NCBI GenBank assembly: GCA_033442325.1
Contig: JAWQFM010000013.1
Span: forward strand, 526,070 to 590,069
Direction of reading: 5' to 3'
DNA length: 64,000 nucleotides
DNA from: Salpingoeca rosetta
Taxonomy: Eukaryota; Protista; Choanoflagellata
Below are positions 54,704 to 63,208 of the stretch, in pieces. The notes below the pieces were generated by a model that was given only the letters and a program-made list of their open reading frames with translations, had not been told where the DNA came from and did no database searches. The first letter of the stretch is position 1. Every line of letters begins with the position of its first letter. Position numbers and translations under genes: made by a program.

Positions 54704-55274
54704 ATGACGGCGAGGAGGGCGAGATCTGAGAGAGCCGCAAAGCAGCGCGCAAAGGTGAAGCTGAGCAGCGCCTCCACAGGACAAGCAGCCTCTCAATCAC
54801 AGCGCCACAGCAACACTGCGGCTGCGAGGAAAAGTGCCAACAGTAGCAGCAGCAGTGCCCGTAACACACCAAGCAACAGCAGACCGGTGTCACCAAACAA
54901 GAAACGCACAGCTCGCTCAGCCTCAGCCACATCACAGAAGCCAGCAACAGCAGCAACAGCAACAACAAAAGAGAGGGCCGGCAAATCACGCAACAAGGCA
55001 GCAGCCGCAGCATCATCTGCAACAGCCACTGATGGGGGCCTGAGACGAACCCGACGTGGAATCGGTGGCGCTGCAGCGACCATTTCGAAGCGTGGACAGC
55101 AGCATCGACCGCCTGTCCCCGCCTCGGAGTTTGGTGTCATCAACTGCCCTCACATCACAAGGTGTGTAGCCTGCAAGCTGCGAGAGAGAAGGGTGAGAGA
55201 GTGTATGCGTTTGTGTGTGCAACACAGAGGAGTCTTGACATTGATCACGTCTCAAGTGTAATGTAACACAGCAA

Positions 55275-58690: not shown

Positions 58691-60472
58691 GCGTGAGTGT
58701 GTGCGTGTGCGTGAGTGTGTGCGCGTGTGTGTGCGTGTGCTGCTGCTGCTGTAGAGCGCGGCTTCTCTCATCCCATGTCGTATGGCTGCCAGCTTTCTCA
58801 CCATCACCATCACCATCACCATCACCATCACCATCACCATCACCATCACCACTCACGTGGCGCGACAACAGCGCGGTCGCAGCTGCCGGCGTCGGCAGCG
58901 GCAATGCGGGTGACGCACCTGCTTGAATCGCTCTTCCGCGTGCTGTGGTCCGGAAAGTGGGCGGTGCTCACCCCGGCCGCTATCCTTGGATATGTGTGGC
59001 GGATAGCGCCGGCATTCCGCGGGTACCGGCAGCAGGACGCGCAGGAGCTGCTGCTGCTGTTGGAGGACGCTGTGCTGAGCGATCTGGCGAGCGTCGAGAA
59101 GCGCCTGAAGCACGTGGCGCCGCCGCCCGCGTCGCTGTTTATCCTGCGCAGTGCACTGCAGGGCCAGTTGCAGACGACCGTGCAGTGCACCACCTGTGGC
59201 CGCGAGTCCACGACGCAGCAGCCGTTTGCATATCTGCCCATCGACGTGCCGGCCGACTGTGCCGGCGGTCGCAGCGGTCGTCGGCGTACGCGCGCCGCCA
59301 CACGCGCGCAGACACGCAATGGTGGTGGTGGTGGTGGTGGTGGTGGTTCGGACGCGAGCAGCACTGGGCGCACATCACCTGCATCATCATCATCATCATC
59401 ACCAACCTCATCGTCGTCGTCTGGGGGAAAAGCGTTTGAGCTGGGCCCACTACTGTCACGGTTCTTCGCTGCGGAGCGGCTGGACGGGGTGTACAAGTGC
59501 GACGCGTGCTCACCCGTGCCGACACAGCCAAGCAAGCGCGCAAAGCGAAGCATTGCACGCGCCAAGCGCCAGGCTGGCGGCAGTACTGGCAGCGTTGGTG
59601 GTGATGGTGGTGATGGCCGTGAAGGTGAGGAGGTTGGTGATGCTACTGCTGCTGGCACTGGGGCGCAGCAACAACAACAGCAGCAGCAGCAGCGAGCGCG
59701 AGGGCGGCGGGCGTCTGATGTGTCGGGGGACGTGAAGCGGCCGAGACGGCGACACAGCCGAGCGTCGACTCGCCTCAGCACCACCGATGATGGTGATGGT
59801 GATGGCGATGGCGATGGTGATGGTGGTCGCAGCAAGAATAACAACAGCAGCAATAGTAGCAGCAACGGCAACACGGGGAGTGGAGTGGGTAGAGAACAGA
59901 GCGCGCCGTCGCAAGCGCACTTCCAGGCGCTATCACAACCGTCATCATCATCATTATCATTGTCATCATCGTCACCGTCCATGCCATCGTCGTCCTCATC
60001 GTTGTCGTATGTGCTGCGGTCGGCCATCAAGTCAACAGCAGTGTCCACGCTGCCGAGCGTGCTCAAGATCCACCTCAAGCGCTTCTGCTGGGAGGGAACA
60101 CAGCGATGCAAGCTGCAGCACCACGTGGCGTGCCCCCTAACCCTGGATATGGAGAGCTACTGCGCGCCCGGGTGCGTTGTTGACGCTGACGGCCGGTTTG
60201 GAGAGACGGTGTATGACCTGGCTGCTGTGATCACGCACGAGGGGCGCGACTTGAATGCGGGCCACTACAAGTGCTACTGCAACCTGCGCGGATCTGCACA
60301 GCACTCTGATCGGTGGATTCTTGCCAACGACGCGCGCGTGCGCATTGTCTCTGTGGATGAGGTGTTGTCTGCACAGGTGTATGTTGCGTTTTACGTGCAC
60401 CGTGCAGTCACCGATTACGTCTCTGATTTCCTGCACGTGTATCCCGACACCCCGCTTGTTCCACACCACTGA
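54704..60472 (+). CDS. Ubiquitin-specific protease with ZnF-UBP, USP44/USP49-like
   Basis: ZnF-UBP ([27 protein letters not shown]), Cys box [42 protein letters not shown], His box [11 protein letters not shown], and NDARV. Confidence 0.92.
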
Positions 60473-60865
60473 TGTGTTTTGACAAGGACATGCACATGTG
60501 TTAGTTTGTGTGTTTGTGTGTGTGTGTGTTTGTGTGTGTGTTTGTGTGTTTGTGTGTGCTTGTGTGTGTGTGTTTGTGTGTTTGTGTGTGTGTGATACAC
60601 GTGTGCGTGTCAGTACTGGTCTTACATCGTACTTAGCTCGCAGCCAGGCCAATATATGCCATTGGGACCCCATCGAAAAGCAGCAGCCAAGCAAAACAAC
60701 GGAGACCAATCATCCACAACAAAGGGCACAGACAAGGCGCGCGCTCACTTTGAACAAACCCCACGAACATGCCATGGACGCAACAAAGCAGAGCAACAAC
60801 AAACGCGGAACAACACTGGATACAGCACAGTGCAATATCAAAGTCAAGAAGGTGTGAAGCACGCG

Positions 60866-61164
60866 CTACTGTGCTGTACGGCGGGGAATCCGCCGGGAAA
60901 CATAGCTAAGGATGGCTTCGTCCAACACAGGGGACTCCGTGGCAGCTTGCTCGGCGGGGTGAGAGACTAACGAAGAAAAAGCAATGCGATGGGGTGGGTA
61001 ACAAAATAGCAAGCGTGAGTGAGCAGCTGGCACATGTAGACCGTTACATGCATGCAAGCACTGGAAGTCGACAGCAAAGAGCCATTGTGTGTGGAATGGC
61101 ATGTGCGTTGAAATAACCAGCGCATCCACACGTACATGCCCACACACAACACACGCACACACAC

Positions 61165-61208
<44 letters not shown>

Positions 61209-62003
61209 AGACACACACACACACACACACGAAGACACACACACACACACACACAGACATACACACACACACACACATACACACACACACGCGCGCGCGC
61301 ACAAACGAAGACACCCTCCATACACACTCGCACACACACATACACACACATACACACACCTGTGCTGGGGAAGCGGCGAGGCTTGCGCTTGGACGTGAGT
61401 GAGCCCGTTGTGTCAGCTTGGAAGGAGAGGGTCAGCTGAGGGCCCTTGGTCTTACTCTTTGCTTTCTTTTGAGGCGCAGCTTTGCTGACTGTCTGTTGTG
61501 CCTGTGTTCCATCCAAGTATGCCAACACATCCCTAGCCAGTGACCGAGTATGCGCATGCGCGTGCGTGTATGCGAGTGAGTATGTTGCGTGTCAGTCAGT
61601 GAGTATATGTTGCGCGTGTGTGAGCGAGTGAAGCGCGCGCGTGCGTGTGTGCGTGCACGGGTGTGCATTGGAGAAAGGGGAGTACAGTGTGGCTGTGCAA
61701 TGGTGGCGTGAGAGCGATGCCACGTGGTGGTGACCCTCCTAGTGACTTGTAGTGTTGCTGTTTGTGGTTCACTGTTGCACATGCACCCTGCTGTCCCCCC
61801 TCCACACATGGTCTGACTGACCCTTTGAGGATGTGTCCGCGGGGCCCAGACGGCGTGATCGCGGAAGGGTCGATGCCGTGCTTGAGAACAAGCTGCTTTA
61901 CAGCAGGCAACAGCGTCTTCTGTTGTGTAGCAGCAGCCACATCACCGCTGAGGCTGGCCGCCGCCGCTCTCATCACCATCAACGCAGCACCACTCGCTCG
62001 CAT
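60866..62003 (-). CDS. Small (~151 aa) protein with a lone peripheral-subunit-binding (E3-binding) domain
   Basis: Exons 62003-61822, 61532-61360 and 60966-60866 join in frame with GT-AG sites. LLPAVKQLVLKHGIDPSAITPSGPRGHILKGDVLAYL is a canonical PSBD. Confidence 0.78.
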
Positions 62004-62007
62004 CTCT

Positions 62008-62106
<99 letters not shown>

Positions 62107-62122
62107 CCAGCGAAACCTGTGC

Positions 62123-62168
62123 GCAACTGAATTCAGTACACTCACCTGTATTGACTGAATTCAGTTGC
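62123..62168. promoter_or_regulatory. 15-bp inverted repeat built from two 12-bp palindromes, in the divergent PSBD/HARS spacer
   Basis: gcaactgaattcagt-N16-actgaattcagttgc; each arm contains the palindrome actgaattcagt. The structure is seen directly; a regulatory role is inferred from position. Confidence 0.5.
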
Positions 62169-62267
62169 TACACAGCGTAACACAGCAGCGGATACGCGTG
62201 CGCACACTTTCCAACAAGACACCACAAGACACCACCACACAACACCCACCATAACAGTCAGCCAGAG

Positions 62268-63208
62268 ATGACGGACAAGGTTGAGGATGTCGGCGCTGCC
62301 GTTGAGCAGCAGTTGAAGGTGGAGGAGAGGCCTGTGGATGCCACGGTAGCAAACAAGGTCGCTGATGCTTCCGAGAAGAAGCCAAAGAAGGAGGGCAAGA
62401 AGAAGAAGAAGAACCAGTTTCTTCTCAAGACACCAAAGGTGTGTGTTCATTGTGTTGTGTGTGTGTGTGTGCGTGTGAGGGGATGGGGTGTGAAGGTACA
62501 CAGTGTGCGTGTGTGTGTGTTTTCTGTTTATGTGCGAGTGCGAGGGTATACAGTGTGCGGGTGTTCTGTTTGTGTGCGAGTGCGAGGGTATACAGTGTGC
62601 ACAAGTGCACATTGTGTGCGAGTTGCATGTTCGTCGTGGACCCCCGGTGTTGATCCTCATTCCACCGCCATTTGTGTCGCATCCAAACATGGCAGGGGAC
62701 GCGCGATTACGGTCCAGAGAAGATGTACATTCGCAACAAGGTGTTTGACACCATTGTTTCTGTGTTCAAGAAGCACGGCGCTGTCAGCATTGAAACCCCT
62801 GTCATGGAGCTCAAGGTAAGCATTTCTCGATGTGTTTGTGGAGGGAGGGAAGAGGACGAGGTGGGGGGGGGGAGGTTTGGAGATGAGGGAAGGCAAGGGG
62901 TAGGGGCAGAGAGAGCAAGAGGAGTTGTGGATTTGGAAGAGCTTGTTTCGTGGCTGCGGGTGGCGTCCTGAGGTTAATATCATCGCAGGGTGTACGTGAG
63001 GGCGTACCTGTGCTTTGTAGCTCATGCATTGGTTCTCTGACACCACCAGGACATTCTCACCGGCAAGTACGGCGAGGACAGCAAGCTCATCTACGATGTA
63101 CGTTTGAACGTGCTTTGCAAGTGCAACAGCCCGCATGTCTGTCTGTCTGTGTGTGTGTGTGTGTGTGTGACTATGTGCTTGCATGTGTATGTGTGTGTGG
63201 CTATGTGC

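What the first reader, a model, noticed from the sequence alone, without database searches (positions are those of the whole stretch)
60866..62003. Stand-alone PSBD mini-protein: candidate E3-recruiting adaptor with no lipoyl or catalytic domain
Seen: a 3-exon, 151-aa ORF with an Ala/Arg-rich N-terminus, a canonical PSBD, a Lys-rich linker and a short C-terminal amphipathic motif (VLDEAILSYV). Only ~264 bp separate its ATG from the divergent HARS ATG, and ~390 bp separate its stop from the USP stop, leaving little room for missing domains. Established: PSBDs normally sit inside E2/E3BP chains between lipoyl and core domains; eukaryotic OGDH uses the small adaptor KGD4/MRPS36 and fungal PDH uses protein X. 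Inference: a minimal adaptor tethering E3 to a 2-oxoacid dehydrogenase core.
Basis: partly seen in the sequence, partly recalled or inferred. Interest (0 to 1): 0.7.

Follow-up and report, generated by a model that had tools for sequence, protein, structure and literature searches.

The report
Core-less, lipoyl-less E3-binding mini-protein
A choanoflagellate gene encodes a 151-residue protein that keeps only the E3-binding domain of the pyruvate dehydrogenase subunit E3BP plus a short conserved tail, so it is probably the smallest known descendant of that subunit and shows how far such an adaptor can shrink.

Summary
The window is Salpingoeca rosetta. The three minus-strand exons (62003-61822, 61532-61360, 60966-60866; GT/AG introns) give exactly the annotated 151-aa protein PTSG_05536.

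Residues 31-69 are a true PSBD (Pfam E3_binding, 40.6 bits; AlphaFold pLDDT about 86). The rest is predicted disordered, apart from a C-terminal helix at 135-144.

No lipoyl or acyltransferase exon lies in the window. Two other craspedid choanoflagellates have orthologues that begin and end at the same points: Barroeca monosierra, and Hartaetosiga balthica (from a transcriptome). Their tails are conserved independently of the PSBD, through LTSKRK-x-RR and Y-x-S-x-R.

The PSBD is of the E3BP type, not the E2 type. It shares a GP[KR]GH[IL]LKGDVL signature with the canonical E3BP of Sphaeroforma and with lipoyl-less E3BP-like proteins such as that of Didymoeca. Every signature-bearing protein with a detectable catalytic motif lacks the catalytic His.

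The genome has E2p, E2b and E2o but no other E3BP.

Best reading: an extremely reduced E3BP that binds E3 and probably docks on the E2p core through its tail. This resembles the fungal protein X helix and the reduced basidiomycete E3BP. The docking step is inferred, not shown.

RNA evidence in S. rosetta could not be obtained. I rate this a new variant of a known kind, of moderate interest.

The parts
61822..62003 (-). Exon 1: start codon, Ala/Arg-rich presequence-like N-terminus (residues 1-30), PSBD helix 1 and loop (residues 31-60, first two bases of G61)
61533..61821 (-). Intron 1 (289 nt, GT...AG). It splits the PSBD between K60 and D62
   Evidence: tblastn of P0001
61360..61532 (-). Exon 2: PSBD helix 2 (DVLAYLDG), Lys-rich linker, conserved basic motif
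61373..61399 (-). Codons for L106-R114 (LTSKRKPRR), invariant in the three orthologues except P112
60967..61359 (-). Intron 2 (393 nt, GT...AG), mostly (CA)n. It is in frame and free of stops, so retention would keep the reading frame
60866..60966 (-). Exon 3: C-terminal 32 residues and TAG stop
60890..60919 (-). Codons for E135-R144, the predicted C-terminal amphipathic helix carrying invariant Y140, S142, R144
62004..62267 (.). 264-bp divergent intergenic region shared with the HisRS gene. It contains a long (GT)n run
60473..60865 (.). 393-bp convergent 3' spacer to the UCH/USP gene. It contains a (GT)n-rich run and no E2-like coding matches

Best explanation
PTSG_05536 is a real, conserved, nuclear gene for a small basic protein (pI about 10.7) that descends from the E3-binding protein of the pyruvate dehydrogenase complex (E3BP/PDHX/protein X). 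It has lost both the lipoyl domain and the acetyltransferase-like core domain. Shown: the gene structure, the PSBD, its E3BP-type signature, the absence of any other E3BP in the genome, and conservation of the tail in two other craspedid choanoflagellates. Inferred mechanism: after import by the Ala/Arg-rich N-terminus, the PSBD (residues 31-69) binds one dihydrolipoamide dehydrogenase (E3) dimer, as the E3BP PSBD does in animals and fungi. The disordered basic tail, with its LTSKRK-x-RR motif and C-terminal amphipathic helix (135-144), then docks on the E2p core as a short linear motif. This would resemble the M2 helix of fungal protein X, or the basidiomycete E3BP whose core-binding domain is reduced to two short helices. 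E3 would thus be tethered to the complex without a folded core domain. The confidence given is for the whole statement including the inferred docking; that the gene is a real, conserved, E3BP-derived PSBD-only protein I hold at about 0.85.
For: Gene and domain.

Full-length orthologues: Barroeca monosierra P0003 (E 9e-15, aligned 29-148) and the Hartaetosiga balthica transcript P0007 (E 1.6e-8, aligned 25-147).

The tails alone are conserved: BLASTP gives 5e-12 and 1e-4.

E3BP type of the PSBD:
- Among the fetched proteins, the GP[KR]GH[IL]LKGDVL signature occurs in Sphaeroforma canonical E3BP P0016 (lipoyl, PSBD and a core with DER in place of DHR), in Didymoeca P0005 (DAR), and in P0006, P0082, P0156, P0158 and P0164. 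Every signature-bearing protein in which the script found the catalytic motif has a non-His residue at that position.
- A two-HMM test favours the inactive-core class for the three mini-proteins by 7.4, 16.3 and 4.9 bits. The S. rosetta E2p PSBD favours the active class by 24.5 bits. Leave-one-out classification was correct in 31 of 35 cases.
- The discriminants of Forsberg 2023 (PMC10156792) are a basic residue before the Gly and a hydrophobic D-x-L-x-x-h motif. The mini-protein has RG and DVLAYL; E2p has DVDAYQ.
- The best solved-structure hit is fungal protein X, 8ohs_C.

Genome content: E2p is on C15, E2b on C18 and E2o on C23, with one membrane-type acyltransferase on C22. No other E3BP was found. 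The Sphaeroforma E3BP query hits only E2p and this locus. E3-like genes are present.

Structure: AlphaFold gives a confident PSBD, a disordered remainder and a C-terminal helix. The hydrophobic moment is highest at residues 137-147.

Precedent for docking through a short helix: PMC10156792.
Against: The tail shows no significant similarity to E3BP or E2 cores (hhalign probability 0.02) or to any Pfam family. Its docking role therefore rests on conservation and analogy alone.

Only three family members were found.

The Barroeca model departs from the PSBD consensus in helix 2. This is probably a gene-model error at the shared intron site, but it is unverified.

The S. rosetta E2p PSBD has Arg on both sides of the Gly, so it might bind E3 itself and make a tether unnecessary.

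The HMM test uses proteins that were all picked for likeness to the query.
Confidence: 0.5

Rival explanations
1. It is an untethered E3-binding factor. The PSBD binds E3, but the protein does not sit on any E2 core. It would buffer, chaperone or partition the shared E3 pool among the pyruvate, 2-oxoglutarate, branched-chain and glycine-cleavage systems, and the basic tail would serve another purpose.
For: There is no detectable core-binding domain. E2p has its own PSBD with Arg after the Gly. The tail is predicted disordered.
Against: The tail motifs are conserved independently of the PSBD across three species, which suggests a second specific partner. Descent from a tethering subunit makes retention of tethering the simpler reading.
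Confidence: 0.2
2. It is an adaptor for the 2-oxoglutarate dehydrogenase complex. Eukaryotic E2o lacks a PSBD, so this protein would supply one in trans, doing the job of KGD4/MRPS36.
For: S. rosetta E2o (C23) has no PSBD. No KGD4 match was found in the genome. It is a small basic protein, as KGD4 is. The role of KGD4 is described in PMC9974300.
Against: The KGD4 search is uninformative: the control rang nowhere, and the gene is small and split by introns. The PSBD is of E3BP descent, which belongs to the pyruvate complex. The tail has no similarity to Kgd4-YMR31.
Confidence: 0.12
3. It is a decaying remnant of E3BP without function. It may be transcribed but is on its way to loss.
For: Two of three domains are lost. 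Few orthologues were detected. Most of the protein has low structural confidence.
Against: The reading frame is intact, with canonical splice sites. The start and stop positions are conserved. An invariant hexapeptide and a conserved C-terminal motif survive between S. rosetta and Hartaetosiga. The Hartaetosiga copy comes from a transcriptome.
Confidence: 0.08
4. The gene model is incomplete, and lipoyl or core exons exist elsewhere.
For: Nothing positive. Only the general difficulty of gene prediction, and the lack of RNA data here.
Against: There are no lipoyl or acyltransferase matches on this part of C13 or in the 64-kb window with E3BP queries. The gene is boxed in by HisRS and USP. The orthologues have the same ends.
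Confidence: 0.03

Closest known systems
E3-binding protein (E3BP / PDHX / fungal protein X) of the pyruvate dehydrogenase complex
   Same: It has an E3BP-type PSBD: a basic residue before the conserved Gly, the hydrophobic D-x-L-x-x-h motif, and a GDVLAYL stretch identical to the aligned fungal protein X sequence 8ohs_C. Its nearest relatives are E3BPs with inactive cores. It is the only E3BP-like sequence in the genome.
   Different: It has no lipoyl domain and no acetyltransferase-like core or core-binding domain. It is 151 residues long, against about 410-500.
Basidiomycota E3BP with its core-binding domain reduced to two short helical stretches (Forsberg 2023, PMC10156792)
   Same: The core-binding part is reduced to short motifs, and binding by a linear motif or helix is presumed.
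   Different: By that paper's criterion of E2-like domain topology, those proteins appear to keep an E2-like domain order, which this one lacks. No sequence relation between the motifs was tested or shown. The lineage is different.
Lipoyl-less E3BP-like proteins (Didymoeca costata P0005, Gefionella okellyi P0159, metagenomic P0006, P0157, P0072, P0073, P0140)
   Same: They have the same PSBD signature, placed directly after a short N-terminus, with no lipoyl domain.
   Different: They keep a full or shrunken core that ends in the usual ...P..LL(L) C-terminus. The craspedid mini-proteins do not.
KGD4 / MRPS36, E3 adaptor of the eukaryotic 2-oxoglutarate dehydrogenase complex
   Same: It is a small, basic, largely disordered mitochondrial protein proposed to link E3 to an E2 core through its two ends (PMC9974300).
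   Different: KGD4 has no PSBD. There is no sequence similarity. It serves a different complex.

Membership tests
PSBD / E3_binding domain (PF02817) | Match to the family profile above the curated cut-off | tested here: met
   40.6 bits against 23.7, residues 33-64. Exon 1 alone gives 33.2 bits.
PSBD / E3_binding domain (PF02817) | Two short helices joined by a loop | tested here: met
   AlphaFold predicts H33-42 and H60-68, with block pLDDT of 85-87.
PSBD / E3_binding domain (PF02817) | Actual binding of E3 (or E1) | not testable with these tools
   This needs a pull-down, ITC or multimer modelling.
E3BP (criteria of Forsberg 2023, PMC10156792) | [quoted passage not shown] | tested here: not met
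   Only E3_binding was found. No lipoyl or 2-oxoacid_dh matches occur at the locus.
E3BP (criteria of Forsberg 2023, PMC10156792) | ii) E3-specific type of PSBD | tested here: met
   The RG and DVLAYL motifs are present, against DVDAYQ in E2p. The signature is shared only with inactive-core proteins. The HMM test favours the E3BP class.
E3BP (criteria of Forsberg 2023, PMC10156792) | iii) Catalytically inactive acetyltransferase-homologous core-binding domain | tested here: not met
   hhalign of the tail against E3BP cores gives probability 0.02. No Pfam hit at E up to 10. The only weak leads are that MAFFT places LTSKRK over the (S/T)xMR(K/R) start of the core, and that language-model neighbours of the tail are short 2-oxoacid_dh fragments at 0.83-0.84.
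E3BP (criteria of Forsberg 2023, PMC10156792) | iv) M3-like motif | not tested
   The logos are in figures that are not held. No fungal sequences were fetched for comparison.
E2 acyltransferase (DLAT/DBT/DLST) | Lipoyl domain and a catalytic domain with DHRxxDG | tested here: not met
   Both are absent.
KGD4 / MRPS36 (PF10937) | Match to the Kgd4-YMR31 profile | tested here: not met
   No hit at E up to 10 for the protein or its tail.

The most novel reading that the evidence does not exclude
In craspedid choanoflagellates, the closest living relatives of animals, E3BP has been pared down to a PSBD plus a linear docking motif. The pyruvate dehydrogenase complex would then tether E3 through a KGD4-like mini-adaptor rather than a core subunit. 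Such a mini-adaptor might even be shared with the PSBD-less 2-oxoglutarate complex. That would be an independent, convergent route to the 'small adaptor' solution, and a natural minimal system for defining what is sufficient for E3 recruitment.
Probability: 0.3. Interest if true: 0.7.

Novelty: new variant of a known kind. Interest (0 to 1): 0.55.

Why it matters
E3BP is treated as a multidomain core subunit (animals) or a core-interior subunit (ascomycetes). A recent study argues that it is ancestral to animals and fungi (PMC10156792).

A conserved form without a lipoyl domain or a core domain, in the sister group of animals, has two consequences. First, it shows that the subunit can be reduced to its PSBD plus about 80 disordered residues. 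Second, it suggests that searches which require E2-like topology will miss such proteins. It also gives a series to work with: Sphaeroforma has the full form, Didymoeca lacks the lipoyl domain, and S. rosetta, Barroeca and Hartaetosiga lack the core as well.

It makes a concrete question testable in a genetically tractable organism: what minimal element is enough to hold E3 on a 2-oxoacid dehydrogenase core?

Tried and rejected
- Word-based protein search with the exon-1 region found only the protein itself.
- Tail as a vestige of the E3BP core: the profile-profile comparison was negative and Pfam was negative. Only weak positional and language-model hints remain. I keep this as a possibility, not a finding.
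- KGD4 kinship: no similarity. The genome search for KGD4 was uninformative.
- Second hit P0002 (1775 aa, 19 stretches): this is a fungal NACHT-ankyrin protein, and the matches are ankyrin repeats that resemble the PSBD loop. It is a false relative.
- The C22 acyltransferase-domain gene as a split-off E3BP core: rejected. It keeps DHR, follows hydrophobic exons and is a different branch of the family.
- A weak tblastn hit at window 55037-55219: low-complexity noise.
- AlphaFold model of the 148-aa shrunken relative P0157: only the PSBD was confident, so no fold search was made.
- The bacterial promoter and terminator scan is irrelevant to a eukaryote.

Full report
**What is there.** The window is Salpingoeca rosetta (G000:C13:526070-590069). 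On the minus strand, three exons with canonical GT/AG introns were read directly: 62003-61822, 61532-61360 and 60966-60866. They translate to 60, 57 and 32 residues. With the two split codons (G61, V119), this gives 151 residues.

The word search with the exon-1 region, given by reference, returned the database record P0001, hypothetical protein PTSG_05536, named by UniRef as a PSBD domain-containing protein. Its sequence equals the three exon translations, and tblastn lays it back on the three exons. All later whole-protein work used that record.

A UCH-family ubiquitin hydrolase ends at 60472. A cytoplasmic-type histidyl-tRNA synthetase starts at 62268.

**The domain.** Pfam E3_binding scores 33.2 bits in exon 1 alone and 40.6 bits in the whole protein, against a cut-off of 23.7. 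A six-frame scan of the 55-Mb genome finds only three PSBDs. The other two lie in genes that I identified from their catalytic exons as E2p (C15) and E2b (C18). E2o (C23) has none, as expected for a eukaryote.

AlphaFold on an 11-sequence alignment gives a confident PSBD: helices at 33-42 and 60-68, with pLDDT about 86. The remainder is predicted disordered, apart from one short C-terminal helix at 135-144. That stretch has the highest hydrophobic moment in the protein.

The protein is strongly basic, with pI 10.7. Its first 30 residues have 10 Ala, 3 Arg/Lys and one acidic residue. This looks like a mitochondrial presequence, but no predictor was available, so import is inferred.

**Is anything missing?**
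- No Biotin_lipoyl or 2-oxoacid_dh match lies on this part of C13.
- tblastn of canonical and lipoyl-less E3BPs against the whole window hits only the PSBD.
- The exhaustive HMMER search of 1.8 billion representatives found two proteins that align over nearly the full length. P0003 is from Barroeca monosierra (136 aa, E 9e-15). P0007 is a transcriptome ORF from Hartaetosiga balthica (207 aa, E 1.6e-8).
- Both start shortly before the PSBD and end within a few residues of the S. rosetta C-terminus. The Hartaetosiga ORF carries an F/L-rich extension that is probably translated leader sequence.
- The tails alone are significantly similar: BLASTP 5e-12 and 1e-4. The invariant positions are L106-T-S-K-R-K111, R113, R114, Y140, S142 and R144.

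So the protein is truly a stand-alone PSBD plus a conserved tail. It is transcribed in at least one relative.

**What kind of PSBD.** The nearest relatives share the signature GP[KR]GH[IL]LKGDVL. They fall into three groups.
- Full form: a canonical E3BP from the ichthyosporean Sphaeroforma arctica (P0016). It has a lipoyl domain, a PSBD and a core in which DHR is replaced by DER.
- No lipoyl domain: a protein from the acanthoecid choanoflagellate Didymoeca costata (P0005; presequence, PSBD, core with DAR), one from the malawimonad Gefionella (P0159), and metagenomic proteins.
- Shrunken core: some metagenomic members, such as P0157, P0072, P0073 and P0140, have shrunken cores that still end in the usual ...P..LL(L).

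Every signature-bearing protein in which my script found the catalytic motif has a non-His residue at that position. Hits with Arg after the Gly mostly keep DHR.

I built one HMM from PSBDs of inactive-core proteins and one from PSBDs of active-core proteins. The three mini-proteins score 7.4, 16.3 and 4.9 bits higher on the inactive-core model. The S. rosetta E2p PSBD scores 24.5 bits higher on the active-core model. Leave-one-out classification was correct in 31 of 35 cases. The caveat is that all training proteins were picked for likeness to the query.

Forsberg 2023 (PMC10156792) gives discriminants of E3BP against E2 PSBDs: a conserved Arg before the Gly, and a hydrophobic motif after the universal Asp. 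The mini-protein has RG and D-V-L-A-Y-L. S. rosetta E2p has D-V-D-A-Y-Q.

The best solved-structure match is fungal protein X (8ohs_C), with an identical GDVLAYL stretch.

Searching the genome with the Sphaeroforma E3BP finds E2p for the lipoyl and core parts, and this locus alone for the PSBD part. The fourth acyltransferase-domain gene (C22) keeps DHR, follows hydrophobic exons and is a different branch of the family.

The conclusion is that S. rosetta has no canonical E3BP, and this mini-gene is its E3BP descendant.

**Origin of the tail.** The LTSKRK-x-RR motif sits about 40 residues after the PSBD. That is where E3BP cores begin with (S/T)-x-M-R-(K/R)-x-I-A-x-R-L, and MAFFT aligns the two. 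Language-model neighbours of residues 90-151 are short 2-oxoacid_dh fragments, but at scores of 0.83-0.84, which is lead level only. Profile-profile comparison is negative and Pfam finds nothing. The tail may be a vestige of the core's first helix, but this is unproven.

**How it most likely works.** Shown: the anatomy, the descent and the conservation. Inferred, in order:
1. The protein is imported into mitochondria.
2. The PSBD binds an E3 dimer, as in the solved E3BP-E3 complexes discussed. E3-like genes are present in the genome.
3. The tail docks on the E2p core.

There is precedent for step 3. Fungal protein X is held in the core mainly by one amphipathic helix (M2) that sits in a pocket at the interface between E2 trimers. 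In Basidiomycota, the core-binding domain appears reduced to two short helical stretches.

The rivals are an untethered E3 buffer, an adaptor for the PSBD-less 2-oxoglutarate complex (KGD4-like; PMC9974300), a decaying relic, and an incomplete gene model. They are weighed in their own sections.

**Limits.**
- No eukaryotic genome other than this one could be searched, so absence from Monosiga and other choanoflagellates is not established.
- The Barroeca model departs from the PSBD consensus exactly at the position of S. rosetta intron 1. This is probably a gene-model error.

**Novelty.** The full-text searches found no description of this protein, and none of an E3BP lacking both the lipoyl and core domains. 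It is a new variant of a known kind: E3BP reduced to its E3-binding domain and a short conserved tail.

Noticed in passing
L014:1534-2232 (G000:C22, about 780.5-781.2 kb), with upstream exons around L014:852-1454: This is a fourth 2-oxoacid_dh-family gene in S. rosetta. It has no lipoyl domain or PSBD, keeps the catalytic DHR, and is preceded by hydrophobic, membrane-like exons. It is an acyltransferase outside the three classical complexes.
   Followed up: partly
P0005 (Didymoeca costata), P0159 (Gefionella okellyi), P0006, P0157 (L016:2036-2482), P0072, P0073, P0140: These are lipoyl-less E3BP-like proteins: a short N-terminus, an E3BP-type PSBD, and a full or shrunken inactive core that ends in ...P..LL(L). 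P0157 is a single-exon 148-aa gene on a 31-kb gene-dense eukaryotic contig, next to SAS-6, WD40, HDAC and homeodomain genes. Together they suggest that E3BP has been reduced repeatedly in eukaryotes.
   Followed up: partly
window 60967-61359: Intron 2 of the mini-gene is a 393-nt (CA)n-rich stretch that is in frame and free of stops. The whole span 60866-61528 therefore reads as one 220-aa ORF, and intron retention would not break the frame.
   Followed up: no
window 62010-62103, 60480-60595 and 61140-61360: Long (GT)n/(CA)n microsatellites fill the divergent promoter region shared with HisRS, the 3' spacer after the USP gene, and intron 2.
   Followed up: no
P0003 residues 37-55: The Barroeca monosierra gene model departs from the PSBD consensus exactly where S. 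rosetta has intron 1 (after HILK). This suggests a shared intron position and a mis-spliced model.
   Followed up: no
P0002 (Xylariales sp., 1775 aa): This NACHT-ankyrin protein matched the query in 19 stretches at E 7e-21. Ankyrin repeats mimic the PSBD helix-loop region (..HG.D..A....G...L), which is a trap for PSBD searches.
   Followed up: yes
window 58715-60472: The last exon of the USP gene codes for an 18-residue His run, plus Gln, Gly, Ser and Asp-Gly runs, inside the UCH domain.
   Followed up: no
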